A DNA stretch of 64,000 bases, taken from Haplodiscus bocki. Its lineage: Eukaryota. This document shows, piece after piece, positions 17,501-59,244 of this stretch; positions within the stretch are counted from its first letter, which is position 1; each line of letters begins with the position of its first letter. The stretch spans positions 51,088,001 to 51,152,000 of the forward strand of contig OZ296658.1 in assembly GCA_965655095.1 (NCBI GenBank). Direction: 5' to 3'. The translations under genes and the position numbers were made by a program. The notes beneath the pieces were generated by a model that was given only the letters and a program-made list of their open reading frames with translations, was not told the origin of the DNA and made no database searches.

Positions 17501-17508
17501 TCGCACCA

Positions 17509-21200: not shown

Positions 21201-21254
21201 TTAAATATTCGATAGTTGAATTTTAAGAAACAAAGCCAAATTAGGTATAAAATT

Positions 21255-22178: not shown

Positions 22179-25100
22179 CATATCGGGATCCATGGTGGTA
22201 TGTGGTTTCTTGGAGGGTCTTCTGTGCTCGCGCGTCCGCTGCGGAGCACACGTCGACTTGTTTTCAAGACCCGCATTACTCGATGTCATACCAAGTACGT
22301 ATTTTGTCAACTATATTTGAAATGGATTCTCTTTGAGTAACAGCCTTGAAGCTTGTCGATAGTAGACCAGACGTCGAGGGTATTGGACCAATCAATACCC
22401 AACCCAACGGTAAACGGACGGCTAATGGAGTTTTGTTTCGGTCGGATCAAAATACTCCAATGGGCGGATACAGTGGAACATATCCTGACCAAGAATCATT
22501 TCGATATCTCCATGACTTTACTTTTCCAAAGAAATTGGTTAAATTTGCCGATATTGGACTTGTATTGAATCGAAATCAATTACTTCGGTTCCAACGTTCA
22601 AGTCTTTTCTCACATACGGCTTGGCTTTAAAAGACGGGCAAGAGCTACCCGAAAGAACCGGTGTCAACTTCAACTGGACAAGTTGTGTGTCAATGGTTTG
22701 ATGTGATTTATTTCCGTGAATTGTAAGTTACAAAACTGTGCCTTGCACATTCAATTTTTTAACCAGATTCTGGGAAGAATACGAGTTATTGCATGCAGAA
22801 TTACAGGGGACAAGGACTTTTCGATTTTGGAAGGATGATTGCAAAAGGACCTCAGTAATCTGCGATAGTCCGTTAACATTCGTCTTGAAGGCCTGCCGGG
22901 GCTCTCTTTTGTTCTGTTCTGCACAACAGTTACATTGCTTACCGTAATTTCCTCAGTTAGTCAGTTTCTTTGCCGTTTTTTGTCGAAAAATTCCTTAGGA
23001 GCCCTGGAGCAAGGTGTTATGACTGCTTGAGCAGCCTTGCTTGAAGCGCGTGCACGATTTTGGACTTTTGCGGAAAGAATGTCGCCCAATCAAGCATCGA
23101 AAACAAGGGTTGTTGTCTGCAACTAATTTCGTCTGTTAGATAGTCGTCTTTTCAAGGAACACCGGACAACGCCACAAGTGTTGCTTTTCTTTACAAGCAG
23201 TACAATTAGTGGTCGAATGTCTGCTTTGTCTCCTATTGATGTTGTTTGATTGGAGCTGCCTGACGCAAATTTTTTGGTTCCGGTCTTCATTCTGATAACA
23301 ATAGCAGATGGGTTGCTGTCTTCGGTTTTCGGTTTTACTGAGGACAATTTAATTCTCCCATGTGCCTCTGCTTTGTTCTTCAACCAATCCTTGAATTTGA
23401 CTGATGTCGGACGATTCCAGTTCTTCTTCACGATATGCATTGAACAAGATCCTTTCAACTTTGGTGGAATTTTCTGTGTCGCTTGGCCTAAGAGGGAAGC
23501 ACTGGGCAAATAGGGATGGTGGTGCAATGACCGAAAAACTCCTCTTAAAGCAGAGATTGTCCCCGAATAACTGATGAAACGTTGACTGATATGCCTTTTC
23601 AGTGGCGGAAGTTTGCTGAGTTGATACACGTAAACACTCACTACTGCCTGTGGCTTCCCGAATTCCATTCTAATGTCTTCTTTGCGCCCTTGTACGAAGT
23701 TCCGCAGTGAGCAAAATCTGCAATCGATGTCTCTGCCTGGCCAATCATTAGAGTCTTTGATTAGATCAATTAATTTAACACCGTCCGTTAGTGAAGCTGA
23801 GCCAAAGGCACTTTTAAACTGGCCTGGCCATTCGTGCCCTTGTAAAGGATTGCCGCTGTATTGCGCCAGTTTCCACTACGTTAGATTGTCTTTTCTTGAG
23901 GACGCCAGCAGTTGAGCTAAATCTTGTACCCTGAAAGCAGTAGGTTCCGATTAAGGCAATAGACCCAGCGGGTACAACTTCGGGTCCTCCAATTGTCATC
24001 GCAGCTGTTAAAACAACGATATTTGGTATAGCACTTCCTTCAAAGTTCGCTCCTGAGGATGAATTCATTTGGTAAACACTGCCACCACCTGTTACAGGAA
24101 CCACTTGTAGAACTGTAGCGTTGTTGCCAATATCCGTTTTTGGTGCTCTTGAAAAGTTTGCGGAGTTGACTATGATATGGCAGTATTTGGCTGTGAAGAT
24201 CCGGTCGTTGGAAAATTTCATGCTGAAAGTTTTGGCAAAACATGGTTGGCTAGCACGGTGAAACTTGAGTTTGGTTTCGAAGTAGCTATCTTTTGTTGAG
24301 CTCAAGGACACAGGGTCGAGGTTTGTTGGTTCTAATTGCGGTTGAGTGGCATTCGATTTAGCGGAGTATTGGGCCTTGTTTAAAGATGACTGAAACGGAC
24401 TTGTCCTATCTTGAACAATAACGGAAGGCGGAGTAATTTCAGTCGCATCGTTGGAAGGAGTCCCCATTAGGAGCACTCCAACTGATACAAAACTTGGACA
24501 TGGTTGCAATCTGTCCACGTCTTTCCGTTTCTACTGTAGAGTCCTGCACCTTAGTAATTTGGTTTTTGACATCGGTTGACGCGTTGGTAACCCAATTATT
24601 CAGTCTCACAACTTTTACACTTTGACTGTGCGCAATAAGTTCGAACAAAGCATCCGGCAGGCTTTGGCAGGTTTTCAAGACTTCTTCGATTAGTTCTAAT
24701 TCAGTCAATGTTGCTTCCACCAGTCTCCTTGTTTTATCTTCTTCCAGCTCAGCAAGCATCAACGCTTGTTCTTTTTTCATTCGCCCTTCTTTCTGCTTGA
24801 GCCACTGGAGGTCAAGTTCTTGGTTCTGCTGAACCAGACGCAACATACCTCAGTTCTGTTTGTCCTTCTTTTGGCGTCGGTATATTGCAATGAAAAGCTG
24901 TCACTGGCTAGATGTCTTAGAAATTCCAGAAGTGGAGCTTTTGAAGTCTGAGAAGCAGACTTGGCTTTCTGATCGGTTTTGACGGAAGACTGCGAAAATT
25001 TCTGCGTTTCAGGAAGGCCACCGGTATACTCACGAGCCCTTTTCAAAACTTTGTCGTTGTCCAGAGTCTAATCGCTCGGCCAGCTTTCCAACTCACTTTT

Positions 25101-25314
25101 CATTGTTTCAGGACCTGTAGTTTTATCTGCCAAAGAGTACCGTTGTTCGTCTTTACTAAATGATTTGGTCATTGCCCTTTCGCACGATTTAACCAAACGT
25201 TCAACTCTTACATTCTTTCCTGCGTTATCTACAGCTTCCATTATTTTTGCTGGTACCTTTTCAACTCCGCCTCCACTTTCGCACGAATTTCATAAAGTTT
25301 TTTCAGGTTTTCAT
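22179..25314 (-). pseudogene. BEL/Pao gag-protease, 3'-truncated
   Basis: DUF1759-type WKLAQYSGNPLQGHEWPGQFKSA..FGKPQAVV, triple zinc knuckle (CFRCL..HSFRKC..C..HNTLL) and DUF1758-type protease region. Confidence 0.85.
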
Positions 25315-25336
25315 GTTGTGAAACAGGCAACACCAA

Positions 25337-26580
25337 AATAGGCGTCGATTTTCCTATGTTTTAGGGGATGTTTCAAAGTTAATTGAAGGTTGCAAAACAA
25401 ATAAAAGATGGGAAGGTCGTTTATTCGTTGTTTTGTGAAAAGTAGTTACGAACTACAAAAGGGTTTTTGAAGACCGGGTTACGTAAACAGAAATTTTCTA
25501 TGGCCTTAGGACTTCATCCAGTCAGCGAAGTCTGGACAATATCGCTAAGGTGAACAAAAAGTAGGGTGATATGACTTTTGAGGTATCAACATGACAATGA
25601 AATCTGGACGCAATCGTGAAAAAGTGTTTGAAGCTGTTGAGAATTCAACCATTCATGGAAGTGTGGACGCAACTCCAGCAGCTGAAAAACGAGCGCGTTT
25701 ACGAAAGGGAAAAGGTGATGTTCGTTTTCTTTTGAGCGTTTTGTGTACGCTAATTAGGTCTTTTCGGTCGGCTTTTAGCAGTAATTGAGGAGAGATCACT
25801 TTTTTCTGCTAAATAAAATCTATGTTCTTCAATTCAATCTGAAGTCTCTTGTGTAATGCTCTCAACTGGTTCAAAAGATGGGTACTAATTTGCTTTCTTA
25901 CGGAGAAAAATCAATTACAATGCTGAACTCTTGAATAAAAATGCTTTTTTCCGTTTCTTGGATTGAATCAAATATACCGGGCGTACGGCCACGCTGGCAA
26001 TACACAAGAGCACTGAGCTTGTCCTGAGGAGTTTCCAAAACCTTTATTAGATTCGGTACTGATATTGGTCGGTAAAAATTACTTTTTTTTCTACAAATGC
26101 TTTTATTCAACACATCGTGCCAAAGAACAACCTCGGTTTTACCTTTCAGAACTTTTAAAAATAAATTTTGCACAAATTTTCTGGGATTTATCGCTTACGG
26201 TTTAGGACTTAGGCCCGGGATAGTGTGAACTTTTTACTTCTACTTTGATTGTTGTTCAGAGCTCAACGCGTATGTCGGAAGATGAATGGAACTTCAAAAA
26301 ATTTTCAACGATTTTCATGCGAAAACGTGTTTTTTTAAAAAAATTCGCGGTTTTAGAGTAAACAACGGGATACTGGGAAAAAATCACAGGTTGTGAAAAC
26401 AAAAGTGCAAACTTTTCGGAGAGATTTTCGAAAAAAAGTTAACAAGTCTTTAGCTCGAAAATATAAAATTTGAGACGTCAGAGATAAAAAGTTCAAGTTT
26501 AATCAAACCGGAACCGGTATTACTCTCGTTCTTTTGGTTCTTCACGTGCTTGAGATAGTTCGATACATTGCTCGTCTACA
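25337..26580 (-). repeat. BEL 5' LTR (type S, ~1.24 kb)
   Basis: Starts TGTAGACG and ends with decayed inverse CGCCTA..; AATAAA ~80 nt before the end; followed by TGGTGTTGCCTG (PBS-like) and the gag ATG at 25314. Confidence 0.65.
25720..26318 (-). pseudogene. SGNH/GDSL-hydrolase-like ORF inside LTR
   Basis: Block-I-like IFxSSIH, block-II HTIPGLS, block-III-like VVLWHDVLNKS, ALVYC strand, block-V-like RALH, basic tail; ~200 codons with stops. Confidence 0.55.
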
Positions 26581-26581
26581 C

Positions 26582-27097
26582 AGGTGAGGTGTTGGAAAAT
26601 CCACAGTTTCATTCGCTTCATTTACCGAATTCTGAGTAAGGCTGGACAATTGATCCATATTTACCGATGTGTTATTTGCAGTCAAGTTTCGGTGTCCATC
26701 ATTACACATCCGATTAGCCATATTGTCAGCTTATTGATTCACTTCGGGTGAATGAGGCGTGGTACCCATCATGTCAGTCACCTTATGCTTTTGACCCATA
26801 AGGTTTGACACTTGAATCATTGCTTCATTAATTGGACGAGGATTGCCAATTTTCTGCACGAAGTCTTTGTTTGCTCTGTGATCAAGATGCCATTAATTTG
26901 ACTCGCACTCTTTTCCTGTGTTGAACTGTCTCATCATCAAACATCTGAAGCGGACACTTAGATCATTCCTGATAGCATCGACTGAAATCATCCGGTAGCT
27001 CTTCGCGGGCACTTTCACTTCCGTAACCTCATTAATGTCAACGATTGCTATGTCTTCCGTTTTGTATTCCGTAAAACAAGGGATTTGACAAGTTTTC
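26582..27097 (-). pseudogene. Fragment of another coding element (possibly post-protease spacer of a Gypsy pol) into which the BEL LTR inserted
   Basis: QIPCFTEYK..EVKVPAKSYRMI.. continuing to ..VDFPTPHL, cut at the LTR TG; partial second copy at 49969-50162. Confidence 0.4.
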
Positions 27098-27102: not shown

Positions 27103-27585
27103 GTGGGAGGTTCAGAGATCATTGAAGGAAGCGTCCAAAAATCCTGTTTGTTGGAAAGATCCAAAAGACAACGTATATGATCTTGGCAGTTATTGCGCCT
27201 AACAGCGTGGTATCTGAGCATTGTTTTTCGGAAGAAACTTTGACAGTCAGGGTAATGGTTCGTACTAGAGTCGTATCCGCAAAGTTTTCTATCTTTGGTA
27301 ACCTGTAATAGTTTTTGCTTTAGCTCTGTTAGATAGATTAACACGTGCTTTATTATTGGCAGCACCATATGGATTTTCATTACAATCAACAACTCGATTT
27401 GGGCTAAAGTGTTGCAAATTAAGACGTCCTCTGCAGTCATAAAGACATACCAGTAGATTATTGATTTTGTCCTGGTGAATTGTTGCGGAAAAATCAGGAG
27501 GGTCGACGGCCCGAGGAGGTTGTGGATTCTTAGTAGAAGAGGGGCGAAGAGTCAAAAAGAAGATGGATAAAATAAATCTGAACAT
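27103..27585 (-). pseudogene. env: env N-terminal part, copy 1
   Basis: Signal peptide MFRFILSIFFLTLRPSST, then LYDCRGRLNLQHFSPNRVVDC..KARVNL..RAKAKTITGY. Confidence 0.75.
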
Positions 27586-27609
27586 GGGTTTTGGAAGGTA
27601 ACGATACGG

Positions 27610-28080
27610 TGTGCAGAACATCAACAGTGTCAAAGACAAACTTAAGTATCGAGCAAACAATGGAAGCACGAAAAGTTTTATAAGTAATTTCTGGACTAAA
27701 ATGGAATTGAATGGACACGCTTATGAAAAGCTGTAAACTCTTCGGCTTCATACAGCTCGTTTTAAGACGACTGTTTCTGAATATCATATATTTCAGTGTG
27801 TATTTGAGCTCAATTCCGCCCTGACTAACAATTTCATCAACACGACAAATTCGATGAACTGGAAAAAGAACAAACATACTTTGATCAATATTCGTACCCA
27901 ATACAATTGAAACGACAATAATAATCTTTCAAGATAACTTGAGACCTTGGGAAGAAAAACATTTCGCCGTTTGCGGGGTTGGAACTTCGGACACTGGAAT
28001 TTCAGTCGGACAATCTAGCTCTAGACCATCGGTCTTCGTAAAAGTTCATTTTTTTCTGTTACATATATTGCTTCGCAACA
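27610..28080 (-). repeat. BEL LTR type T (solo copy, ~470 bp)
   Basis: Starts TGTTGCG, ends TGCACA; flanked by CGGTAC / CCGTAT; homologous to 41311-41781. Confidence 0.6.
27965..28034 (-). ncRNA. tRNA-like Pol III unit in LTR-T (copy 1)
   Basis: A-box-like TGGTCTAGAGCTAG, B-box-like AGTTCCAACC, TTTTT 5 nt downstream. Confidence 0.55.
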
Positions 28081-28229
28081 GTACCGTGTTCGTCAACACG
28101 ATCAAAGTCAAATTCAGTTCCTGAACAAACAAAGGAAGCGGGAAAGGTTTTATACGTGTTTTCTGTACAAAAAAACTGGAGGAAAATAAAAGGCTAAGAA
28201 ACAAACACTAATTGCAAACTGGTTTTTTA

Positions 28230-34825: not shown

Positions 34826-35138
34826 AAAGTAATTAAAGTACAAAATGAGGTTAGTCTACTATCATGAGAAAAAGGATTTTATGTAGATTTGAATCATGGC
34901 GGTAGAGGTGAAGGTTGATGTTGCTGTTTAATCGTATATGAAGGCGTTTGTTAACTAAACAAAGGAAATCAGTGAGGGAGAATGACAGAAAGTATACAAT
35001 TCTGAATATTCGGTGCGAAGATTGAGGACGACGCGATTGTACCGAAAATGGTACGTTTGCCTAAATTTGAAGCGAGGTTTTGTTAAAAGAGGTAATTTTG
35101 AAAACACCTTCAAGAAATTGAGTTCAAAAGTCGCACCA

Positions 35139-35914: not shown

Positions 35915-36129
35915 GTTCTCGTTTCCACGAACTGTCGGACTTCATTTTGTACTCAATGCTCAAGAATGGCTAGCGGGCCTATATTGTGTGGCTTTTGTTT
36001 CTCTAAAGAAACGTTAAAAGGTTTTATCTTTTGAATGTCAGTTGTTATCTATGCCTCCTGGGTTAAGGAGTCTTATCAATCATAACGGTAGGAGTTGTTC
36101 CCATAGTGGGCAACCAAGTAAAATGGTAA

Positions 36130-38830
36130 GTGGTTTATTGGTTTTAAAACAAAAAGGTTGACAAACCAACTTAAGGTAGGAGATGTTAATGTTCAGAAAG
36201 TTTTAAGGCTAATAAGTTCTACATGAAAAATAGGATATAGTTAGAGTAAAGTATGTAATTTTAGGTATGTGGTAATAAAAAAGGAAATTGGAAGAGAGTA
36301 ACATTAACAAATCCAATGACTGCTATACATCAGTGAGAAAAAATATTGACATGAAAGGTGTTAAATGCTTAGTCAGATGAGTCCTATAATTTTTAGGGTG
36401 TTTTTTTGAAGGAATGAGTGTATTATGAAAGTCACGATAATGTTTCAGTTTCTGAATTTATTCAGAGACTTCATCCTGTATTTTTTCAACATGTCCGTTG
36501 TTGGTTTTTTAAAAATTCAGCAAACAATGTGGGGTTAGGTTCCTGCAATAGAGTGCATAGAGTGCGAATGAATGCAAGATTTTTCAAGTGAATCATGCGA
36601 AGATGCATGTCAATTTGCAGGTGGTTGTGGTATTTGGTTGCGATAAATGAGTTTTGTGACTAAAAGGTCAAGTTGTGCAATTTTAATTGAAGAGGTTAGG
36701 AGATGCCTATAAAAGTGGAGTGCTGTAGGAGGGGTAGGTTGGGAGATCTAAGAGTGGAAAAGTTAGCCAGTTTGAGTGGTTAGTAGAGGAGGTGGTTGGT
36801 TATTGTAAAGGTAGAGATGCGGGTCATGTATTGAACGACCTTCACGTGGGACAATGAGAGGTTGGTTGGGTTTCTTTCTGAATTGTAGAAAAAAAATATT
36901 CTTTAGGAGGTTCATAAATCCGGATACGGCCATGCAAGTAAGGAGAGTTGAGTGTGTATTGAGCTGAGGTTGAATAGGTTGATGAGATTTAAGTGTGAGC
37001 GAAAATTCTTTAGTACGCTATGTGTGGTCAGTATAGAATTTTTCAAAGGACTATCGGTGTATTTTTTTATATGATTAAATCCGATCGAGTGAAGAGTTAG
37101 AAGTGGGTAAATTTAGTAGGTCAAAATTCTTGGGTTCAATAAAGTTAAATCTCAATTGCGTAAAGTTAAAGTTAGGTTTACACCAAAAAGCAAGAGTTAG
37201 TTGCCTTAGAGACATGTGAACATAGATGATCTTTAGTATAGTCTATTGCAAGGAGTGTAAATTGATTAATAGTTTCTTGCCTGTAGAATTAAGTTATTGT
37301 AGGGTTGTAGAGGATAGCAGGCGCCTATAACTGGGGGCTGTGAATATCACGGATTTCAGTAATTGTGGTGGGAAAAAACGTGTAGGTGGATGGATAGAAG
37401 GAGTGCATGGCATCGGTGATGTTATAGGCGTGGGCTGAAATTTGAGGTGTAGAACAGGAAGATAACATGCGTCGTTAGTGAATTGGCATGCAGGTGGAAT
37501 TTTGGGTCAAATCTATAGCGTGCATGGATTGGGTACTAGGAAAGCTAGTTAGAAACAAAGTAGACACGATAGACGGACAACGTGGATTGCTAAATAGGAG
37601 TGTAAATGATAATGAAGCAGTTCTGTTAACACATGCAGATTGACTTGTTAGTGGAGGTGCAAGGATTGATTTGAGATTTCGTGTAGCTTGGAAAGAAGTA
37701 GAGGTAGTTAAAATTGGTTGTTAGGAAGATTTAGTAGGAGTTATTTGTTGAGTGGTATCAGAAGGATTAGCAAAAAGTTTTTTTGGAGGGTTTTGACTGT
37801 TAGGTGGTATTACTAAAGTTTTTTGAATGTCTTGCAAATGAATATTTGATTGTGAAGGAGGAGAATGGTTCACAGGAGGAGGGGTTGCCAGAGACCATGT
37901 TGATGTCTGATTTTGAGGGATAGTAAGTTCGAGCGACGTCGAGTTGTTTGAGAGAATATTGTCGAAAGGTAGAAAAGCTGGTCTTCGTCTCAGACCGAAG
38001 TAGCGGGTTGGTGTTATTCTGAGGGTTGCATCGCAAAAAAATGAGAGGAGCCTTTTCAAATTAAAATGTTGATAAAATTTTATTACTTTGAGGTTAAAAG
38101 AGCTGCAAATCGAACCAAATTTTTTAAAATGAATGCTTTCTAAGGTAGCGAAGACATGTACAGCTCTGAAGGAATTAAGGTATTGGCCAGAATTCAGAAA
38201 AAGTTATTTTCGTCATCAGACATGCAGCGACAGTTAGTTCTGTGAGCTCTCAAATTATACTGGGAAATTTCAACTGAAGTCAGGCAGCTTCAGTTGAAGT
38301 TTTTCTTTAATTGACGTCAAATTTGTTTTTCTTTTTTTTGACGGCAACGTAGACAGCGAAGGTGTCACAGAGAATTGTTTTGGCGAGAATTTGTTGGAGA
38401 GTGTATTGTTTACCGAAAACGTCTTTTCTTTTTTGAGTTATTTAAAATTTTTGCTGAAACTTTTTGTGTGATCAACGGTTTCATGACGGTTGGGGCACCT
38501 TTGTTTGCAAGAAATCGTGCAAATAATTAATTTTTTTAATTAATTTTGTGAAATAGTTTACGAAGGTTCCTTTACGAAACTTCCCATTTGAAATTTGTTT
38601 TTGGTAACCCAAATCGGTGTTAAAAACATTGCAATTCGGTAATTTGTGGTAATGTAAAACTGTTATCATTTTAATTAGAAAAGTTTTGTGGAGATGGTTT
38701 TTAGGGTGGAACCGATGAGTTAATTTGGAGCGTCAGTTGGTTTTCTTTTTAGTAATTCTTGCATACATTTTGAATAATATTTTTGGGGTAGTAAGTCAAT
38801 TTGGTTAAATGATCTTTTAGATGGTGTGTT
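36130..38830 (-). pseudogene. Post-env orphan coding-like region, copy 2
   Basis: Collinear with 18.5-21.2 kb and 60.2-62.9 kb; ORF fragments 37721-38059 and 38481-38669. Confidence 0.55.
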
Positions 38831-38879
38831 TGAATAATCAATAGTTGAATTTTAAGAAACGAGGCCATTATAGGTATAA

Positions 38880-41286
38880 TATTTTATGTTGGAGTAACAA
38901 TTTCCCCTACGATATATTGGGTGGTTTCATTTGAAACACTAGGTTTGCTTCATGAATCTGTAATATTGGGGATGGTTGTATTAGAAGATGATTGATTCGG
39001 TGGAGTTGACTTTGGGTTTTCATCATTGCCCTTATTTTTTGGTGGATAGACTGTTCGTTTCAAAAAATTTTCTGCTGTTGATGTGAATAAAACTGCGAAA
39101 AAATTATCTGTGAGCCAAAAATTTGATTTATTTCATAGAGTATTTTTTACATAATTTAGAATTGTTACTGCAAAAAGAAGAAACTGATGCAAAGCATCTT
39201 TTAAAGCACATTTTGTTCCGAGGTAATAGGGTCAACCAAATGTGTTGAAATACATTGTTTTGAACCAGTTTCATTTAAAAATGTTTTTGAGGATAAATTA
39301 CTATCCGTTGATCCTATTCGCATTTGTTTTGTCCGATAGGATTGCCAAAAATCTTTTTTGTGGCCAGATTTTGGATTACTTTCGTCTAAGAAATCTTAGC
39401 TTGTTGTTTTACGAAAAAACTGACTTGTTTTGTCTGAATGCTGTGTCAACAGAATTGTATTCCCAAAATCTTTTATATGTTTAGGTGGGTAAAGGCCTCC
39501 AGTATGTGCAGAGAAAGTGCTTGGCTGAAGTGTACTTCGAAGATCTGAAGGTTTAAAATGAGTTGGAAGGTCCTGTTTTACTGGCATTGGTGTTGAAAAT
39601 TAATAACCATTTTCATCAGGGTTTACTGCATTGAAATTAGCTGGGTTACTATCACATGCGATTTCTATTTCTAACTATTATGATTGATGACTTACAGGAT
39701 CTACAGACTAGTGTGTATCCTGACAGTGAATTGGTTTTTTGACAAAGTATTTCTCCCTGTGAATATAAAAAGGAGAAATATAATGTTGGCTTTCACATAA
39801 CCGAAGCGAAACACATCGTTATGAAAAAATTATTTTTGTTTCCTGTTACTACCTCTCCTGCTGGAAAAAGTTTGGTTTCAGCTACGGAAAACAAACTCAA
39901 AATTTGAGTTCGTCAGATTCCACAAAGCTGGGTTAGTGTATTTCTTTCACTAATGGTCACGATCTCATATATATGGCTAACAATGTACTCAACTTTGGAA
40001 TTAAAATGTGCAGGTATGTCCAAGGCTTCAAATCTAATACTGGAGCTTCATCTATTTCTTCCTTCGCAAGATCATCGTTCGTTGATTTTTTCACTGCGGA
40101 TATCAACAGTAAAAAGAGCGGGTTCGCTGTCAAAAACTTCGTTCTTTTTCCAACTTATCGAGTTATTAACCACACGTGGGTGTTCTGGTAAATCTGTATG
40201 AAACTCAAAACCAATTGGATATCGGAAAAAGTTTTTTTCATACTGAGCTTCAAGTTATGGAGATTGTTGGTTGCAAAAAGACTTTATTTGTGGTAAAACT
40301 TCAAACCTTGTATTTGGGTCACCGGGAATTTTTTTGAAAAGTGAGTCGGCTGCGCCCAATTTTTCTTCATTTTGTCAATTTGATAAAGATTCTATCCAAT
40401 TTCGGTTCTGGCTTTGGTTAGTTCTGCTTCAATTTGATGAGGAAAATAAACAAAGTAATGGTCATTCTGAAACTAAAGTATTGATGCAGAAAAAAGGACA
40501 GTTTGTTGACAATATTCGTCTTTGTTTAGATGAGATATAGATCGGCCATTATAACCTATTTGGTTTTGTTTGTATTTTCGACTTTTTCCTTGTTAGAAAT
40601 ATTAACTTCCAACTAAAAATGATATTAAAAAGTTCATTCAGTTGGGATTTACAAAATTATTGTATTTTTGTGAATTATCTTTTGTCCATGTTTTTAACAT
40701 AGATTTAAGGTTTTACACCCAAACTCCATAGAAGTCTAGACCAAAGATTTTGCTGACATTTTGCTTTGAATAATAGGTATTAGTTCCGTTGATCGAAATC
40801 TATAAGAACAGCGATTGGTTAAGGAGGTTCGATAGTTTTGTTTTATCGTTTGTTGGGAAGATACAGAAGACAATCTAGATAATTTCGGCAGTCGCTGCGC
40901 CTAATAGCGTGGTATCTGAACATTGTTCTTCGGTAGAAACTTTGGCAGTCACGGTAATGGTTCGTGCTAGCGCCTTATCCGCAAAGATTCGTATTTTGGT
41001 ACCCTGTGATAGTTATTGCTTTAGCTCCGTTAAGCAGATTATCACGTGTTTTTTTTTGGCAGCATCGAATGGATTTTCACTACAATCAACAACTTGATTT
41101 GGGCTAAAATGGTGCAAAATAAAATTAGGACGTTCTCTACAGTGATAATGACATGCCACTAGATCGTTTGTTGTGGTGGATTTTCTCGGAAAAATCAGGA
41201 GGATAGTCGACACGAGGAGATAATGGATTCTTAGTAATAGAGAGCTGAAGAGTCAAAAAGAATATGGATAAAATCATTCTGAACAT
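38880..41286 (-). pseudogene. env: Full-length decayed env (~800 codons), class III fusion protein-like (gB/chuvirus G type)
   Basis: Signal peptide MFRMILSIFFLTLQLSIT; YHC..HFSPNQVVDC; TRFEVLP..FC; HFNSKVEYIVSHIY..ERNTLTQLC..RTQIL helix; GNKNNFF; VDPVSHQ..EIACDSNP; TM-like segment near 39.1-39.25 kb. Confidence 0.78.
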
Positions 41287-41310
41287 GGGTTTTAGAAAGT
41301 ATTGGTACCG

Positions 41311-41781
41311 TGTGCGGAATATCAACAGGATCAACAAGAAATTTCTGTCTCCAACAAACAATGGAAGCAGGAAAGTTTTCATAACTGATTTCTGGACTTA
41401 AATGGTATTGGATGGACATGTTTGTGAAAAACTGTACACTCTCCAGCTTACTACATCTCAATTTAAAACGACTGTTTCTGAATATCATTTGTTTCAGTGT
41501 GTATTGGAGCTCATTTCCGCCCTGAATAACGTTCTCTTTAACATGACATAATTCGACCAACTGGCAAAAGAACACTTCTACATTTATCAATATTAGTGAA
41601 AAATACAACTGAATCATCATTAAGATTTTTTCAAGATTTTGTGAGACTAAGAAACAAAATTTGTTTCGCCGTTAGCGGCATTGGAACCCCAGACACTGGA
41701 ATCTCAGTCCCACACTCTAACTCTAAACCATCGGTCCTCGTAAGAGTACTTTTTTTCTTTTATATACATTGCTTTGCAACA
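41311..41781 (-). repeat. BEL 3' LTR type T
   Basis: Directly follows the BEL integrase tail and PPT-like CCGGAGAA; TGTTGC start, CCGCACA end, then CGGTAC. Confidence 0.7.
41667..41736 (-). ncRNA. tRNA-like Pol III unit in LTR-T (copy 2)
   Basis: GACCGATGGTTTAGAGTTAGAGTGTGGGACTGAGATTCCAGTGTCTGGGGTTCCAATGCCGCTAACGGCG followed by TTTT. Confidence 0.55.
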
Positions 41782-41914: not shown

Positions 41915-44900
41915 TCAACGAAAAAAGTTTACGAGGGATCCGGGGGTGGTAAAACATGAGCGGGTTTTACAATTGAACGTATCAGATTTCCCGACAACGT
42001 TTTTATTTCTGGTTCTAGCAATGGCGTCACCAACGTAATTTAATTTGACAACACCTGCAAGCGTGTAGTATCCTCTTGGACCAGTAGCTTCAACAATCCA
42101 AACCAGATCGCCGGTTCTCAGGTCTTGGTCTATCGACGAAAACCAATTGGATCGGTGATTCAAAAGCGGGACGTACTCTCTGAACCATCGACTTCAGATC
42201 GTAACGTTTTCTGTGGTCAAAATCGCTACTCAGAGTTGATGGTAAACTTGAGCCGGATCTTCCTAGCAGGAAGTGGCTGGAGTCAAAACATCCAATTCAG
42301 TCGCATCAGCATTTGTTTGAATTAGTGGACGGGAGTTTCGAATTTGTTCAGCTAGACAGAATGTAGTCGTCAGAATCCCGTCGGTTGTGGGGTCCTTCCG
42401 CCACAAAAAACCGAGAGACGGTCGGTCGTTTGGAATTGCTTTTTTTTGAAAAAAACTTTCCCTCGATGTCAGCAGAAACTGCATACGAGTACCTGTGGTG
42501 ACGGAATAGCAGACGAATAAGGTTTTGCAACAGGTGACGCCCCTGTTAGAAGTGCACTGGTGAGCGGATGGCCATGAAATTCAGCTGTGCCGTTGAGGAC
42601 TCGTCGTAATTCGCCGGGTTTGTGCGGGTGATACACAAGGTGATGTGGTAAACACCCTTCACGGGGTTGGTCGATCTTAAAATAAACGCAATTTTTGACT
42701 GCGACGATATAACTATTTGAAAGATTGTCAGTTTTGGTCGTAGAATACTGCTCTTCTAAATTCGGATCTTTCCGAAGACAGCGTTCAAGGGACTTGAGCT
42801 GAATTAATTCCGAAATATAGTTGTTCGACATTATATTTTTTGTGATTAGCTCAAAGCACACCAACGTGATATCGGGATCTATCGTGGTATGTAGTTTCTT
42901 GGAGGGTCTTCTGTGCTCGCGCATGCGCTGCGGAGCACACGTCGACTTCTTTTTAAGACCCGCATTACTCGATGTCATACCAAGTACGGATTTCGGCAAC
43001 TACATTTGAATTGGATTCTCTTTGAGTAACAGCCTTGAAGCTTGTCGGTAGTAGAACAGACGTCGAGGGTATTGGACTAATCAATACCTACCCCAACAGT
43101 AAACGGACGGCTAATGGAGTATTGTTTCGGTGGTATCAAAATACTCAATGGGCGGATAGAGAGGAACATATCCTGACCAAGAATCATTTCGACATCTCCA
43201 TGACTTTACTTTTCCAAAGAAATTGGTTATATTTGCCGATATTGGACTTGTAGTGAATCGAAATCAATTACTTCGGTTCCAACGTTCAAGTCTTTTCTCA
43301 CATACGGCTTGGCCTTAAAAGACGGGCAAGAGCTACCCGAAAGAACCGGTGTCAACTTCAACTGGACAAGTTGTGTGTCAATGGTTTGATGTGGTTTATT
43401 TCCGTGAACTGTGTGTATCAAAACTGTGCCTTGCACATTCAATTTTTTCAACCAAATTCTGGGAAGAATACGAGGTATTGCATGCAGAATTACAGGGGAC
43501 AAGGACTTTTTGAATTGGGAAGGATGATTGCAAAAGGACCTCAGTAATTTGCAATAGTCCGTTAACATTCGCCTTGAAGACATGCCGGGGCTCTCATCTG
43601 TTTTGTTCTGTACATCTGTTACAATGCCTACCGTAATTTCCTCAGTTTAGTCAGTTCTTTGCCGTTTTTTGTCGAAAAGTTCTTTCGGAGCCATGGAGCA
43701 AGGTATTATGACTGTTTGAGCAGCCTTGCTTGAAAAGCGTGCACGATTTTGGGCATTTGCGGAAAGAATGTGGCCTAATCAAGCATCGAAAACAAGGGTT
43801 GTTGTCTGCAACTAATTTCGTCCGTTGGGTAGTCGTCTTTCCAAGGAACACCGGACAACGCCACAAGGGTTGCTTTTCTTTACAAGCAGTACAATTAGTG
43901 GTCGAATGTCCGCTTTGTCTCCCATTGATGTTGTTTGATTGGAGCTGGCTGACGCAAATTTTTTGGTTCCGGTCTTCATTCTGATAACAATAGCAGATGG
44001 GTTGCTGTCTTCGGTTTTCGGTTTTTCTCAGTACAATTTATTTCTCTCATGTGCCTCTGCTTTGTTCTTCAACCAAACCTCGAATTTGAGTGTTGTCGGA
44101 CGATTTCAGTTCTTCTTCACGATATGCATTGATTGAGATCCTTTCAGCTTTGGTGGAATTTTTCTGTGTCGCTTGGCCCAAAAGTGATGCACTCGGGAGA
44201 TAAGGATGGTGGTGCAATGACCGAAAAACTCCTCTTAAAGCAGTAATTGTCGCCGAATAACTGATGAAACTTCCATTCATATGCCTTTTCAGTGGTGGAA
44301 GTTTGCTGAGTTTGTACATTTAAGCACTCACCACTGACTGTGGCTGCCCGAGTTCCGTTCTAATGTCTTCATTGCGCCCTTGTACGAAGTTCCGCAGTGA
44401 GGAAATTCTGCAATCGACGTCTTTGCCTGGCCAGTCACTAGAGTCTTTGATTACATCAATTTAACACCGTCCGTTAGTGGAGCTGAGTGAAGGGCACTCT
44501 TAAACTGGCCTAGCCATTTGAGCCCTTGTAAAGGATCTCCGCTATTTTGCGCCAGTTTCCACTGCGGTCAATAGTCTTTTCTTGAGGACGCCAGCAGTTG
44601 AGCTCAATCTTGTACCCTGAAAGCAGTAGGTTCCGTTCAAGGCAATAGACCCAGCGGGTACAACTTCGGGTCCTCCAACTGTCATCGGAGCTGTTAAAAC
44701 AACGATGTTTGGTATAGCACTTCCTACAAAGTTCGGTCCTGAGGATGAATTCAATTGGTAAACACTGCCACCACCTGTTACAGGAACCACTTGTAGAACT
44801 GTAGCGTTGTTGTCACTATCCGTTTTTGGTGCTCTTGAAAAGTTTGCGGAGTTGACTATGATATGGCAACATTTGGCTGTGAAGATCCGGTCGTTGGAAA

Positions 44901-45993
44901 TTTCCATGCTGAAAGTTTTGGCAAAACTTGGTTGGCTAGCACGGTAAAACTTGAGTTTGGTTTCGAATTGACTATCTTTTGTTGAGCTCAATGACTCAGA
45001 ATCAAGCTTTGTTGGTTCTAATTGAGGTTGAGTGGCATGCGATTGAACGCAGTATTGGGCCTTGTTTTATGATGACTGAAACGGATTTGTCCTATCTTGA
45101 ACAAAAACGGAAGTCGGAGTAATTTCAGTCGCATCGTTGGAAGGAATCCCCATTAGAAGCACTCCAACTGATACAAAACATGGACTTGGTTGCAATCTGT
45201 CTGCATCTTTCTGTTTCTACAGTAGAGTCTTGCACCTTAGTAAGTTGATTTTTGACATCGGTTGACGCGTTAGTAACCCATTTATTTATTCTTATAAATT
45301 TTACACTTTGACTGTGCGCAATAAGTTCGGACAAAGCATCTGGCAGGATTTGGCTGGTTTTCGAGACATCTTCGATTAGTTCTAAATCAGTCAATGTTGC
45401 TTCCACCAGTCTCCTTGTTTTATCTTCTTCCAGTTCAACAAGCATCAACGCTTGTTCTTTTTTCATTCTCTCCTCTTTCTGCTTGAGCCACTGAAGGTCA
45501 ACTTCTTGGTTCTGCTGAACCAGACGCATTATACCTACGTTCTGTTTGTCCTTTTCTCGCGTCGGTGTATTGCAATGAAAGGTTCCTGCTCTCACCGGCT
45601 AGATGTCTTAGAAATTCCAGATGTGGAGGTTTTGAAGTCTGAGAAGCAGACTTGGCTTTCTGATCGGTTTTGACGGAAGACTGAGAAGTTTTATGCGTTT
45701 TAGGAAGGCCATCGATATACTCACGAGCTTTTTTAAAAACTTTGTCGTTGTCCAGAGTCACGTCGCTCGGCCAGCTTTTCAATGCTTCGGGATCTGTAGT
45801 TTTATTTGCGAAAGAGTACAATTGGTCGTCTTTACTAAATGATTTCGTCATTGCCCTTTCGCACGATTTAACCAAACGTTCAACTCTTACATTCTTTCCT
45901 GCGTTATCTACAGCTTCCATTATTTTTGCTGGTACCTTTTCAACTCCGCCTCCACTTTCGCACGAATTTCATAAAGTTTTTTCAGGTTTTCAT
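41915..45993 (-). pseudogene. BEL/Pao polyprotein with internal deletion (gag, protease, RT N-half fused to IN C-terminus)
   Basis: DUF1759 gag; WRCPVF..CFRCL..HSFRKC..C..HNTLLH; RT LPHHLVYHPHKPGELRRVLNG, YAVSADIEG, FLWRKDP; DUF5641-type LRTGDLVWIVE..PRGYY. Confidence 0.9.
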
Positions 45994-48900
45994 GTTGTAA
46001 AACAGGCATCGCCAAATTAGGCTTCGGTTTTCCTACGTTTAAGGGATATTTCTAGGCTAATTGAAGGTGGCAAAACAAATAAAAGACAGGAAGTTCTTTT
46101 ATTTTTTGTATTTTGAAAAGTAGTTACGAACTACAAAGGGGTTTATGAAGACCGGGTTACGTAAACAGAAATTTTCTAAGGCTTTAGACTTCACCCAGTC
46201 AGCGGAGTCTGGACAATATCGCTAAGGTGAACAAAAAGTAGGGGGATATGACCTTTGAGGTATCAACTTGACAATGAAGTCTGGCCGCAATCGTGAAAAA
46301 GTGTTTGAAGCTGTTGAGAAATTAACCATTCAATGAAGTGTGGACGCAACTCCAGCAGCTGAAAAAAGGAGGGGGTTTACGAAAGGGAAAAAGTGACGTT
46401 CGTTTACTTTTGAGCGTTTCGTGTACGCTTATTAGGTCTTTTCGGTCGGATTTCAGAAGTAATTGAAGAGAGATCACTTTTTTCTTCTAAAAAAATCTAT
46501 GTTCATCATTTCAATCTCAAGTCTATGGTGTAACGTTCGCAACTGGTTCAAAAGATTGGGACTAATTTGCTTTCTTACGGAGAAAAATCATTTAAAATGC
46601 TGAACTCTTGAATAAAAAAGCCTAATTGCGTTTCTTGCAGTGAATCAAATATATCGGGCGTACGGCCACGCTGGCAATACACAAGAGCACTGAGCTTGTC
46701 CTGAAGAGTTTGCAAAATATTTATCAGATTCGGTACTGATAATGGTCGGTAATTTTTACTTTTTTTTCTACAAATGCTTTTATTCAGCACATCGTGCCTA
46801 ACAGCAACCTAGGTTTTACCTTTCAGATCCTTCAAAAATAAATTTTGCACAAAGTTTCTCGGTCTTATCGCTTAGGCTTAGGACTTAGGCCCGGGATAGC
46901 GTAAACTTTTTACTTCTACTTTGATTGTTGTTCAGAGCTCAATGCGTATGTCGCAAGATGAAAAGAACTTTAAGAAATTGTCAACGATTTTCATTTGAAA
47001 ACGTGTTTTTTTAAAGAAAAATTGGGGGCTTTAGAGTAAACAACCGGATACTGGGAATATATCACAGGCTGTGAAAACAAAAATGCAAAATTTTCGGAAA
47101 GATTTTCGAAAAAATTTTTACAAGTCTTGAACTCGAAAGTATAAAATTTGAGATATCAAAGGTTTAAAACTCAAGTTTAATCAAACCGGAACCGGTATTA
47201 CTCTCGTTCTTTCAGTTCCTCACGTGCTTGAGATAGTTCGAGATATTGCTCGTCTACACAGGTGAGGTGTTGGACAATCCACAGTTTCATTCGCTTCATC
47301 AACCGAATTGTGATCTTCATCTACCAAAAGTTTTTTCAGGTTTTCATGTTGTGAAGCAGGCAACGCCAAATTAGGCGTCGGTTTTCCTACGTTTTAAGGG
47401 ATATTTCTAGGCTAATTGAAGGTGGCAAAACAAATAAAAGATGGGAAATCCTTTTATTCTTTGTATTTTGAAAAGTAGTTACGAACTACAAAGGGGTTTA
47501 TGAAGACCGGGTTACGTAAACAGAAATTTTCTGAGGCCTTAGGACTAAGCCCAGTCAGCGGAGTCTGGACAATATCACTAAGGTGAACAAAAGTTAGGGT
47601 GATATGACCTTTGAGGTATCAACTTGACAATGAAGTCTGGACGCAATTGTGAAAAAGTGTTTGAAGCTGTTTAGAAATCAACCATCCAATGAAGTGTGGA
47701 CGCAACTCCAGCAGCTGAAAAAACGAGGGGGTTTACGAAAGGGAAAAAGTGACGTTCGTTTTCTTTTGAGCTTTTCGTGTACGCTTATTAGGTCTTTTCG
47801 GTCGGCTTTTAGCAGTAATTGAGGAGAGATCACTTTTTTCTTCTGAAAAAAATCTATGTTCATCAATTCAATCTCAAGTCTATGGTGTAATGTTCTCAAC
47901 GGGTTCAAAAGATTGGGACTAATTTGCTTTCTTACGGAGAAAAATCATTGGAAATGCTGAACTCTTGAATAAAAAAGCTTATTTGCGTTTCTTGGAGTGA
48001 ATCAAATATATCAGGCGTACGGCCACGCTGGCAATACACAAGAGCACTGAGCTTGTCCTGAGGAGTTTGCAAAATATTTATCAGATTCGGTACTGATAAT
48101 GGTCGGTAATTATTACTTTTTTTTCTACAAATGCTTTTATTCAGCACATCGTGCCAAACAACAACCTAGGTTTTATCTTTCAGATCTTTCAAAAAAAATT
48201 TGCACAAATTTTCTCGGTCTTATCGCTTACGGTTTAGGACTTAGGCCCGGGATAGCGTAAACTTTTTACTTCTACTTTGATTGTTGTTCAGAGCTCAATG
48301 CGTATGTCGCAAGATGGATAGAACTTTAAGAAATTGTCAACGATTTTCATTTGAAAACGTGTTTTTTTAAAGAAAAATTCGGGGCTTTAGAGTAAACAAC
48401 CGGATACTAGGAATAGATAACAGGCTGTGAAAACACAAATGCAAAATTTTCGGAAAGATTTTCGAAAAAATTTTTACAAGTCTTGAACTCGAAAAAATAA
48501 AATTTGAGACATCAAAGGTTTAAAACTCAAGTTTAATCAAACCGGAACCGGTATTAATCTCGTTCTTTCGGTTCCTCACGTGCTTGAGATAGTTTGAGAT
48601 ATTGCTCGTCTACACAGGTGAGGTGTTGGACAATCTACAGTTTAATTTGCTTCATCAACCGAATTGTGATCTTCATCTAACAAAAGTTCTTTCAGGTTTT
48701 CATGTTGTGAAGCAGGCAACACCAACTTACGCGTCGGTTTCCCTACGTTTTAAGGGATATTTCTAGGCTAATTGAAGGTGGCAAAACAAAAAAAAATGGG
48801 AAGTTCTTTTATTCTTTGTATTTTGAAAAGTAGTTACGAACTACAAAGGGGTTTATGAAGACCGGGTTACGTAAACAGAAATTTTCTAAGGCTTTAGACT

Positions 48901-50025
48901 TCACCCAGTCAGCGGAGTCTGGACAATATCGCTAAGGTGAACAAAAAGTAGGGGGATATGACCTTTGAGGTATCAACTTGACAATGAAGTCTGGCCGCAA
49001 TCGTGAAAAAGTGTTTGAAGCTGTTGAGAAATTAACCATTCAATGAAATGTGGACGCAACTCCAGCAGCTGAAAAAAGGAGGGGGTTTACGAAAGTGAAA
49101 AACTGACGTTCGTTCTCTTTTGAGCGTTTCTTGTACGCTTATTAGGTCGTTTCGGTCGGCTTTTAGCAGTAATTGAGGAGAGATCATTTTTTTCTGCGAA
49201 ATAAAATCTATGTTCTTTTATTCAATCTCAAGTCTCTGGTGTAATGCTCTCAACTGGTTCAAAAGATTGTGACTAGTTTGCTTTCTTACGGAGAAAAATC
49301 ATTTAAAATGCTGAACTCTTGAATAAAAATGCTTTTTTTCCGTTTTTTGGAGTGAATCAAATATATCAGGCGTACGGCCTCGCTGGCAAAACACAAGAGC
49401 ATTGAGCTTGTTCTGAAGAGTTTGCAAAACATTTATCAGATTCAGTACTGATAATGGTCGGTAATTATTACTTTTTTTCTACAAATGTTTTTATTCAGCA
49501 CATCGTGCCAAACAACAACCTAGGTTTTACCTTTCAGATCTTTCAAAAACAAATTTTCCACAAATTTTCTCGGATTTATCGCTTACGGTTTAGGACTTAG
49601 GCCCGGTATAGCGTAAACTTTTTACTTCTACTTTGATTGTTGTTCAGAGCTCAACGCGTATGTCGCAAGATGAATAGAACTTCAAAAATTTTCAACCATT
49701 TTCATGCGAAAACGTGTCTTTTTTTTGAAAATTTGGGGCTTTAGAGTAAACAACGGGATACTGGGAAAGTATCACAGGTTGTGAAAACAACAGTGCAATC
49801 TTTTCGGAAAGATTTTTTAAAAAGTTTTATCAAGTCTTGCTCTCAAAAATATAAAATTTGAGATGTCAAAGATTTAACGTTCAAGTTTAATCAAACCGGA
49901 ACCGGTATTACTCTCGTTGTTTCGGTTCTTCAAGTGCTTGAAATAGTTCGATACATTGCTCGTCTACACATGTGAGGTGTTGAACAATCCACAGTTTCAT
50001 TCGCTTCATCTACCGAATTGTGAGT
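45975..50025. repeat. Three tandem ~1355-bp units, each LTR-S with SGNH-like ORF plus short flanks
   Basis: LTR starts (cgtctaca on +) end at 47258, 48614 and 49968; ORF ATGs at 46994, 48350 and 49705. Confidence 0.92.
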
Positions 50026-50164
50026 AAGGCTGGACAATTGATCCATATTTACGGATATGTTATTTGCAGTCATGTTTCGGTGTCCGTCATTATACATCTG
50101 ATTAGCCTTATTGTCAGCTAATTGATTCATTTCGGGTGAACGAGGCATGCTACCCACCATGTCA

Positions 50165-50326
50165 ATAAGAATCTTTCAAGATAATTTGAGACCTTAAGAG
50201 AAAATGTTTTTCGCCGTTTGCGGGGTTGGAACCTCGGACACTGGAATCTCAGTCGGACACTCTAGCTCTAGACCATCGGTCTTCGTAAAAGTTCTTTTTT
50301 TCCGTTACATATATTGCTTCGCAACA
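50165..50326 (-). repeat. Truncated LTR-T (5' part)
   Basis: TGTTGCGAAG start at 50326 preceded by CGGCAC; truncated by a deletion at ~50165. Confidence 0.65.
50212..50281 (-). ncRNA. tRNA-like Pol III unit in LTR-T (copy 3)
   Basis: GACCGATGGTCTAGAGCTAGAGTGTCCGACTGAGATTCCAGTGTCCGAGGTTCCAACCCCGCAAACGGCG followed by aaaaacaTTTT. Confidence 0.55.
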
Positions 50327-50480
50327 GTGCCGTTTTCGGAACGTCAACACGATCAAAGTCAAATTTAGTTGTCGAACAAACAAAGGAAGCAGGAAAGTTT
50401 TTTTACGTGTTTTCTGTACAAAAAAAGAAAGGGTGGAACATATAAGGCTGAGAAACAAACACTAATTGCAAACTGGATTT

Positions 50481-59240: not shown

Positions 59241-59244
59241 ACCA

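What the first reader, a model, noticed from the sequence alone, without database searches (positions are those of the whole stretch)
41650..41781. tRNA-like Pol III transcription unit embedded in the U3 of a BEL/Pao LTR (3 copies)
Seen: about 45 nt inside the LTR start, all three copies (27965-28034, 41667-41736, 50212-50281) carry a 70-nt sequence. It has an A-box (TGGTCTAGAG), an anticodon-arm-like GA-CTGAGAT-TC, a B-box-like GGTTCCAA(C/T)C and a T4-5 run within 8 nt downstream. There is no SINE body, tail or TSD. Known analogues: Cassandra TRIMs carry 5S RNA in their LTRs, and some viruses use tRNA-like Pol III units. Inference: a captured Pol III gene could act as a promoter or insulator, a small-RNA source or a self-encoded primer.
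Basis: partly seen in the sequence, partly recalled or inferred. Interest (0 to 1): 0.8.

Follow-up and report, generated by a model that had tools for sequence, protein, structure and literature searches.

The report
Decayed tRNA-derived block in BEL/Pao LTRs
The end-repeats of two old, broken BEL/Pao jumping genes carry a worn-down piece of a tRNA gene that belongs to the repeat itself; a young relative in another organism still has it with good RNA polymerase III promoter boxes, so a feature so far described only in miniature elements (Helenus) also occurs in full-length ones.

Summary
The 70-nt stretch is present three times at the stated coordinates, always on the minus strand, 46 nt inside a ~357-bp repeat (TGTTGCG...TTTTCA). 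Other loci show this repeat is the LTR of an 8-9 kb BEL/Pao family (LTR pairs, PBS, PPT, 5-bp TSD, DUF1759, Peptidase_A17, rve).

The three copies are not independent. w3 and w2 are the 5' and 3' LTRs of one element, and w1 is a segmental-duplication paralog of w3.

The block is tRNA-derived. All 25 family LTR copies that cover this part carry it at the same place. An HMM of this genome's own tRNAs hits 17 of the 25 colinearly. Five copies keep a perfect B box (GGTTCGANNCC), and A-B spacing is 42 nt.

It is not a tRNA. ARAGORN and Rfam call nothing, only 47% of cloverleaf cells pair (same as controls), and there is no covariation.

The window copies are the most decayed: the B box reads GGTTCCAAY, and none is individually recognisable as tRNA-like.

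A young relative in another organism (LTRs 99.1% identical) keeps the module in both LTRs.

Pol III activity is untested. The self-primer idea is not supported.

The closest known kind is Helenus/TRIMp3, so this is a new variant. The scan found the same thing earlier on other DNA of this genome (s1-376473, s1-376455).

The parts
27724..28080 (-). LTR copy w1: complete 5' LTR of BEL/Pao element A (TGTTGCG...TTTTCA)
   Evidence: Boundaries shared with >20 dispersed copies. BEL/Pao internal region follows downstream.
27965..28034 (-). tRNA-derived block, copy 1. A-box-like TGGTCTAGAGC, B-box-like AGTTCCAACCC, T5 at 27955-27959.
   Evidence: No tRNA call. z = -0.1 against real tRNAs.
27146..27723 (-). 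580-nt segment D1 after the LTR, homologous to the segment after w2. It has no TGG-type PBS and its nature is unresolved.
   Evidence: Self-BLAST 27146-28080 = 40848-41781, 80%.
22180..26610 (-). Internal (gag-pol) region of element A, cut off at 22178 by an unrelated repeat
   Evidence: 72-75% identity to the internal regions of full-length elements L071, L072 and L024.
41424..41781 (-). LTR copy w2: 3' LTR of BEL/Pao element B, preceded by a PPT-like tract (…GAACCCGGAGAA)
   Evidence: 41399-42037 matches the LTR plus 3' internal end of L008/L024.
41667..41736 (-). tRNA-derived block, copy 2. TGGTTTAGAGT, GGTTCCAATGC, TTTT at 41656-41659.
40848..41423 (-). Segment D2 after w2, homologous to D1
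42200..47313 (-). Internal region of element B (integrase end at 42200-42385, up to the gag region)
   Evidence: Colinear with L072 5919->1086 and L027 752-938.
45973..50164 (-). 1354-bp unit of the gag-side internal region, in three tandem copies
50163..50326 (-). LTR copy w3: first 164 nt of the 5' LTR of element B. The rest of the LTR and the leader are deleted.
   Evidence: nhmmer LTR positions 8-204 only. 91% identical to w1.
50212..50281 (-). tRNA-derived block, copy 3. TGGTCTAGAGC, GGTTCCAACCC.

Best explanation
SHOWN: The 70-nt stretch is a decayed tRNA-derived module. It is a fixed, inherited component of the LTR of one BEL/Pao retrotransposon lineage. It lies in sense orientation, about 46 nt from the LTR's 5' end, and is copied with the LTR at every retrotransposition. 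That is why both LTRs of full-length elements and all solo or partial LTRs carry it at the same position.

What survives of the tRNA is the part that makes an internal type-2 Pol III promoter: an A-box-like D-arm, an anticodon-arm remnant, a B box in the T-arm with tRNA-like spacing, and a T-run just downstream. The acceptor and T stems do not pair, so no tRNA can be made.

The three window copies belong to two ancient, broken elements that were later multiplied by a segmental duplication. They are among the most degraded versions (B box GGTTCCAAY).

INFERRED: In active elements the module was kept by selection as a TFIIIC/Pol III-binding element. A young relative in another organism has it in both LTRs, and across diverged LTR variants the B-box block is one of only two conserved islands. 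It would work either as a chromatin boundary or position-independent activator for the LTR, or as the source of a short (~90 nt) Pol III transcript. It cannot drive the 8-9 kb genomic RNA. In this window it is most likely a functionless fossil.
For: Same block at the same LTR position in all 25 family copies that cover this part of the LTR, including both LTRs of L071, L072, L025 and L074.

BEL/Pao identity: DUF1759, Peptidase_A17 and rve lie between or next to the LTRs. There is a PBS TGGTGGCCATAGAGAGGTTCGA, a PPT GGGCCCGGAGGA and a TSD GTCAT/GTAAT.

tRNA homology:
- An HMM of this genome's own Lys/Arg/Thr tRNAs hits 17/25 LTR copies, all on the element strand and colinear (tRNA positions ~10-66), with best E 1e-4. 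Twenty shuffles gave at most 8.3 bits.
- Best pairwise matches have z = 4.6-5.0 for L008, L015 and L018.
- The pattern TGGTCTAGNGGT-N24-36-GGTTCGANNCC, taken from LTR copies, hits 424 places in 1.5 Gb and 0 for the reversed control. Nearly all of the 100 places listed are tRNA-Glu or tRNA-Pro genes.

Boxes: B box 9/9 in 5 copies and 8/9 in many. A-B spacing is 42 nt in nearly all, and T4+ lies 14-21 nt after the B box.

Conservation: the block is the most conserved part of the LTR, with majority frequency 0.85-0.92 against 0.73-0.89 elsewhere.

Young relative L077, in an assembly that does not match G000: LTRs 99.1% identical, TSD CCTAT, intact PBS. The module is in both LTRs, scores 20-21 bits with the tRNA HMM, and is 22/26 identical to a Lys/Arg(TCT)-type D-arm, z 5.8-7.1.

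A second variant, L080, has B box GGGTTCAATCCCC plus T5. The LTR start and the B-box block are the conserved islands in the cross-variant alignment.
Against: No structural tRNA signal anywhere:
- Rfam tRNA model silent at E<=10, even for L077.
- ARAGORN silent at default settings and at -ps/-ps90. Only noise-level calls with inconsistent anticodons appear at -ps80.
- Cloverleaf cells paired 47.4%, equal to the shuffle mean and to the -1 register. No covariation.
- Fold z-scores near 0.

The window copies alone are not significantly tRNA-like.

The extra conservation of the block is modest. The copies in this genome are all old, with LTR pairs 64-78% identical, so conservation within this genome mostly reflects shared ancestry.

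The parent tRNA species is ambiguous: Pro/Glu-like A box, Lys/Arg-like in L077.

Five more distant BEL/Pao contigs showed no module, though their LTRs may not be on the contigs.

No expression or binding data were available. The function is inference only.
Confidence: 0.75

Rival explanations
1. The three window copies are live Pol III genes. TFIIIC binds the A and B boxes and Pol III makes a ~90-nt tRNA-like RNA that ends at the T-run. The RNA serves as a small-RNA source, insulator or primer.
For: A-box-like and B-box-like motifs at tRNA spacing and a T4-5 run are present in all three copies. A TATA-like AATATATG lies about 30 nt upstream.
Against: The B box has C at position 57, which is a purine in cytoplasmic tRNAs (established knowledge), and w1 also has G52>A. 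Scores are 7-8/9 for the B box and 6/9 for the A box. The elements are ancient wrecks, with LTR identity 78-81% and broken ORFs. There is no cloverleaf and no stable fold. The PBS is not complementary to the block.
Confidence: 0.07
2. The resemblance to a tRNA is coincidental. The conserved block is an ordinary Pol II enhancer or transcription-factor site of the LTR, for example the palindrome GACCGATGGTC, or part of the leader RNA.
For: The most conserved stretch is GACCGATGGTCTAG, a palindrome. Structure-aware tRNA detectors find nothing. U3/R/U5 are unmapped, so the block could lie in R.
Against: There is colinear similarity to real tRNAs over ~50 nt in 17/25 copies and in L077, well above shuffles. 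An exact B box with correct spacing occurs that otherwise matches only tRNA genes in 1.5 Gb. The palindrome is not kept in L077 or L080, while the B box is.
Confidence: 0.08
3. A tRNA-derived SINE inserted separately into each LTR copy, or the copies are SINE heads that happen to lie in LTR-like DNA.
For: Kojima proposes SINE2 insertion into an LTR as the origin of Helenus (PMC10886601). This could be the original event here too.
Against: The position and flanks are identical in all copies, and both LTRs of each full-length element carry the block. It has no tail or TSD of its own. Genome searches with 121-nt and 79-nt queries returned only LTR copies.
Confidence: 0.02

Closest known systems
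Helenus (TRIMp3) non-autonomous LTR retrotransposons, Kojima 2024, PMC10886601
   Same: Both have a tRNA-derived sequence inside the LTR with conserved box A and box B (GGTTC). Usually it is not a functional tRNA. PBS and PPT are of the normal LTR-element type, and Pol III use is inferred from conservation only.
   Different: Helenus elements are 311-1263 bp and have no coding capacity. In animals they give 4-bp TSDs and are linked to Gypsy partners. The paper argues that autonomous partners must use Pol II and are unlikely to share such LTR sequence. Here the carriers are 8-9 kb BEL/Pao elements with gag-pol and 5-bp TSDs. Xenacoelomorpha is not among the phyla listed for Helenus. That this genome is an acoel comes from earlier notes and was not checked here.
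Cassandra and Ajax TRIMs (5S rRNA-derived module in the LTR)
   Same: A small-RNA-gene promoter module is carried in both LTRs and inherited with them.
   Different: Their module is 5S-derived (type-1 promoter) and the elements are non-autonomous. Cassandra is in plants and Ajax in nemerteans (PMC10886601).
tRNA-derived SINEs (SINE2)
   Same: A tRNA-derived head keeps A and B boxes while the cloverleaf decays.
   Different: There is no LINE-derived body or tail, no TSD of its own, and it is never found outside the LTR.
Genuine tRNA genes of this genome (Glu, Pro, Lys, Arg, Thr arrays)
   Same: A box up to 8/9, B box up to 9/9, the spacing, the AGGTC variable region and the downstream T-run.
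   Different: The acceptor stem pairs in 28% of cells and the T stem in 35%. The Rfam score is below reporting level, against 52-70 bits for the real genes.

Membership tests
tRNA gene (Rfam RF00005 / ARAGORN) | Scores at or above the gathering threshold (29 bits) of the covariance model | tested here: not met
   There was no hit at gathering. There was also none at E<=10 on ten LTR loci, on window 27920-28090, or on the young relative. Real tRNAs of this genome score 52-70 bits.
tRNA gene (Rfam RF00005 / ARAGORN) | Four-stem cloverleaf maintained, with covariation | tested here: not met
   47.4% of cells are paired, against a shuffle mean of 47.4% and 49.9% at slide -1. The acceptor pairs at 28%, the T stem at 35%, and the covariation score equals the shuffles. 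ARAGORN finds 0.
Type-2 Pol III promoter unit | A box (TRGCNNAGTGG) and B box (GGTTCGANNCC) at tRNA-like spacing, with a T4+ terminator | tested here: inconclusive
   In the family, the B box is 9/9 in 5 copies, the A box is 6-8/9, spacing is 42 nt and the T-run is present. In the window copies the B box is 7-8/9 with a pyrimidine at position 57. Sequence alone cannot show activity.
Type-2 Pol III promoter unit | TFIIIC/Pol III occupancy and a transcript | not testable with these tools
BEL/Pao LTR retrotransposon (Belpaoviridae) | Paired LTRs with TG...CA ends, PBS, PPT and a short TSD | tested here: met
   LTR pairs were found in L071, L072, L025 and L077. The PBS starts TGG, the PPT is GGGCCCGGAGGA, and the TSDs are GTCAT/GTAAT and CCTAT/CCTAT.
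BEL/Pao LTR retrotransposon (Belpaoviridae) | BEL/Pao-specific domains (DUF1759 gag, Peptidase_A17, rve, DUF5641) | tested here: met
   Pfam hits lie between or next to the LTRs. The gene tables of L075-L077 show the same domains. The window's internal regions are colinear with these elements.
Helenus / TRIMp3 | tRNA-derived sequence with box A/B inside the LTR | tested here: met
Helenus / TRIMp3 | Miniature non-autonomous element (no coding region, total length up to ~1.3 kb) | tested here: not met
   The carriers are 8-9 kb with gag-pol. The shortest derivative seen is 1.9 kb (L074).
tRNA-derived SINE | Stand-alone dispersed unit with its own tail and TSD | tested here: not met
   All genome matches extend into LTR sequence on both sides.

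The most novel reading that the evidence does not exclude
Autonomous BEL/Pao retrotransposons of this animal lineage have kept a tRNA-derived TFIIIC/Pol III module in their LTRs across species because it works for them. It could act as a built-in chromatin boundary that shields the LTR promoter from silencing, or as the source of a regulatory small RNA. That would make Pol III-type modules a feature of full-length LTR elements and not only of miniature parasites of them.
Probability: 0.35. Interest if true: 0.65.

Novelty: new variant of a known kind. Interest (0 to 1): 0.42.

Why it matters
Small-RNA-gene modules in LTRs (Cassandra, Helenus, Ajax) have been described only for miniature non-autonomous elements. 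The Helenus paper explicitly expects autonomous partners not to carry them.

A coding BEL/Pao lineage that carries a tRNA-derived A/B-box module in both LTRs, in decayed form here and in a 99%-LTR-identity copy in another organism, questions that expectation. It also offers a likely source from which Helenus-type miniatures can arise.

In practice, such modules inflate counts of tRNA-like sequences in genomes. They also mark places where TFIIIC may bind outside tRNA genes.

For this particular window the copies are fossils, so the local biological weight is small.

Tried and rejected
- Functional tRNA: rejected. ARAGORN and Rfam are silent. The cloverleaf count equals the controls and fold z-scores are near 0.

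- Self-encoded primer: rejected. The family PBS is closest to Arg-type tRNA 3' ends. It scores only 5-8 (T-loop only) against the reverse complement of the block. L077's PBS also differs from its own block.

- Independent SINE insertions: rejected.

- Long ORFs of the window in Pfam: nothing except a sub-threshold Trypsin hit. The BEL/Pao identity had to come from other loci and from colinearity.

- Naming the parent tRNA: not settled. The A box looks Pro/Glu-like, and L077 looks Lys/Arg(TCT)-like. I held only Lys, Arg and Thr genes by reference.

- Segment D (580 nt after w1 and w2): tested as a possible LTR extension or leader. No PBS or clear end was found, so it is left unresolved.

- TSDs for the window elements: none found.

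- More distant BEL/Pao contigs (L075, L078, L079, L081, L082): no module seen. These contigs may lack the LTRs, so this says little.

The consensus lines that DNA alignment prints were ignored.

Full report
**1. What is at the coordinates**

The three stretches are real and alignable.

ARAGORN finds no tRNA in the window. Rfam finds nothing at gathering thresholds, nor at E<=10 on the 171 nt around copy 1.

**2. The repeat that carries it**

A search of the window's own genome (1.5 Gb; the window is C11:51,088,001-51,152,000) returned at least 23 matches on many chromosomes. BLAST of a wider query shows that dispersed copies share sharp boundaries at window 28080 and ~27724.

An alignment of 26 copies shows a 357-395-bp unit that starts TGTTGCGAAGCA and ends CAGCTTTTCA.
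- Six copies are followed by a PBS-like TGGTGGCCATAGAGAGGTTCGA.
- Many are preceded by a PPT-like GGGCCCGGAGGA and by conserved internal sequence.
- Full-length elements with two such repeats occur in L071 (8.7 kb), L072 (9.0 kb) and L025.
- Between or next to the repeats lie DUF1759, Peptidase_A17 and integrase.
- L071 has a 5-bp TSD, GTCAT/GTAAT.

The family is old: LTR pairs are 64-78% identical.

**3. Anatomy of the window**

Self-comparison and comparison with the full-length elements give two elements, both on the minus strand.
- Element B runs from 50326 to 41424. It holds a 5' LTR of which only the first 164 nt remain (w3), a 1354-bp piece of the gag-side region in three tandem copies, the rest of gag-pol, the integrase end, a PPT and the 3' LTR (w2).
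- Element A has a complete 5' LTR (w1, 28080-27724) and internal sequence 26610-22180. It is cut off by an unrelated repeat at 22178.

The two elements sit in two copies of a large segmental duplication. w1 and w3 are 91% identical paralogs, and w2 is 78-81% identical to them.

A 580-nt segment follows both w1 and w2 and has no PBS. I could not resolve what it is.

**4. Is the block tRNA-derived?**

Yes, at family level.
- All 25 copies that cover this part of the LTR have it in the same place.
- Natural copies such as L018 read TGGTCTAGGGGTACCGTGTCGGGTTGAGATTCCAAGGTCCGAGGTTCGAATCC. This is an A-box-like D-arm, a 7-nt anticodon-type loop CTGAGAT flanked by a 4-bp stem remnant, an AGGTC variable region and an exact B box.
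- The pattern TGGTCTAGNGGT-N24-36-GGTTCGANNCC, taken from such copies, matches 424 places in the genome and none for the reversed control. Nearly all of the 100 places listed are tRNA-Glu or tRNA-Pro genes, plus the LTR copies L008 and L018.
- A sequence HMM built from this genome's own Lys, Arg and Thr tRNA genes hits 17 of 25 LTR copies. All hits are on the element strand and colinear over tRNA positions ~10-66, with best E 1e-4. Twenty shuffled sets gave 0-4 scattered hits of at most 8.3 bits.
- Box scores: B box 9/9 in five copies, A-B spacing 42 nt in nearly all, T4+ 14-21 nt after the B box.
- The block is the most conserved part of the LTR, though only modestly so.

**5. Is it a tRNA or a folded RNA?**

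No.
- Laid on 19 copies, the standard cloverleaf pairs in 47.4% of cells. This equals the shuffled mean and is no better than a slid register. The acceptor pairs at 28% and the T stem at 35%, and there is no covariation.
- Minimum-energy folds are not cloverleaves and have z-scores from -1.0 to +1.3.
- Lowered ARAGORN thresholds give only noise-level calls with inconsistent anticodons.

**6. The window copies**

All three have GGTTCCAAY, with a pyrimidine where tRNAs have purine 57. w1 also has AGTTCC. None is hit by the tRNA HMM. Their best similarity to real tRNAs has z = -0.1, 3.1 and 1.1. They are fossils inside broken elements.

**7. Primer idea**

The family PBS is nearest to Arg-type tRNA 3' ends among the tRNAs I held. 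It is not complementary to the block.

**8. Relatives elsewhere**

A profile-free search with an integrase fragment next to a 3' LTR led to a 387-kb contig of ENA assembly ERZ25074608 (L077).
- It holds a 7.97-kb BEL/Pao element with LTRs 99.1% identical, a TSD CCTAT/CCTAT and a 29-nt PBS.
- It has the same PPT and the same LTR start, TGTTGCAAAGCA.
- A homologous block sits at the same distance in both LTRs.
- That block scores 20-21 bits with the tRNA HMM. It is 22/26 identical to the D-arm of a Lys/Arg(TCT)-type tRNA (z 5.8-7.1), with B box GGTTCAATTCC.
- Neither its LTR nor its flank matches the window's genome, so it comes from another organism.
- A second LTR variant in that assembly (L080) keeps GGGTTCAATCCCC followed by T5. 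In the cross-variant alignment the LTR start and the B-box block are the conserved islands.
- Rfam still calls no tRNA there.

More distant BEL/Pao contigs showed no block, but they may lack the LTRs.

**9. Mechanism**

Shown:
- The block is tRNA-derived and is inherited as part of the LTR.
- The promoter-type elements survive better than the stems.
- The block is retained in a recently active relative.

Inferred:
- In active elements it binds TFIIIC/Pol III.
- Because a T-run follows at once, and the element is 8-9 kb with many T-runs, Pol III cannot make the genomic RNA.
- The plausible roles are a boundary or activator element for the LTR, or a short RNA.
- Whether the block lies in U3 is not known.

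**10. Comparison with the literature**

Kojima 2024 (PMC10886601) describes Helenus. These are TRIMs of 311-1263 bp with tRNA-derived LTR sequence, conserved boxes A and B, and usually no functional tRNA. They are grouped with Cassandra and Ajax as TRIMp3. The paper notes that 'not a few' Repbase LTRs resemble part of a tRNA, but it argues that autonomous partners must use Pol II and should not share such LTR sequence.

The present case has the same kind of module in autonomous BEL/Pao elements, so it is a new variant of a known kind. A full-text search found no paper describing this for BEL/Pao.

**11. Earlier notes of this scan**

Notes on other DNA of the same genome (s1-376473, s1-376455) reached the same reading and gave me the Helenus lead. 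I checked the paper, and I checked the claim of younger relatives myself. That the genome is an acoel comes from other notes and was not verified here.

Noticed in passing
window 45973-50164: A 1354-bp piece of the BEL/Pao gag-side internal region is present in three tandem copies (90-93% identical) inside element B. The same piece is single in element A.
   Followed up: partly
window 16879-22178, 34823-39895, 58610-64000, and 27916-34823 = 50163-57046: The window is built from large direct repeats (89-94% identical), forming a tandem segmental duplication of a composite of BEL/Pao and another retroelement. Earlier notes call the other part a Gypsy-like element with a class III envelope gene. 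GC skew is strongly positive (0.2-0.47) in these parts.
   Followed up: no
L074 7968-9849 (G000:C2:13.595 Mb): A 1.9-kb derivative with two family LTRs (64% identical), a PBS and a 1.15-kb internal region without a long ORF. It is a short non-autonomous offshoot that also carries the tRNA-derived block, so it is a possible step towards a Helenus-like miniature.
   Followed up: partly
L077 15651-15704 (minus strand), ENA ERZ25074608: A third tRNA-like stretch (19 bits with the tRNA HMM, GCCTAGTGGTTAGCATG...GTTCGAGTCCCGC) lies 4 kb from the young BEL/Pao element. It is unrelated to that element's LTR and may be another tRNA-derived repeat.
   Followed up: no
G000 C7:23.68-23.78 Mb, C4:107.93-108.14 Mb, C6:84.75-84.85 Mb, C11:32.11-32.18 Mb: tRNA genes (Arg-TCG, Lys-TTT, Glu, Thr) sit in very large tandem arrays with many slightly mutated members. 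These include anticodon changes (Lys>Arg-TCT, a TTA 'stop' reader) and one member with the same GGTTCCAAT B-box variant as the window LTRs.
   Followed up: no
G000 C3:71385376 and C3:75830894: Two further matches to the A-box/B-box pattern resemble neither known tRNAs nor this LTR family (TGGTCTAGTGGTAATGTCTTGAG...GGTTCGAAACC).
   Followed up: no
window 45125-45595 (minus strand): A 156-aa ORF inside the BEL/Pao internal region gives a sub-threshold Pfam Trypsin hit (E 0.0014, 18.9 bits against a cut-off of 20.6). It is probably spurious.
   Followed up: no
window 5123-5206 (minus strand): ARAGORN at a lowered threshold (-ps) calls an 84-nt tRNA-Cys(GCA)-like sequence that it does not call at default settings. 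It may be a pseudo-tRNA or noise.
   Followed up: no
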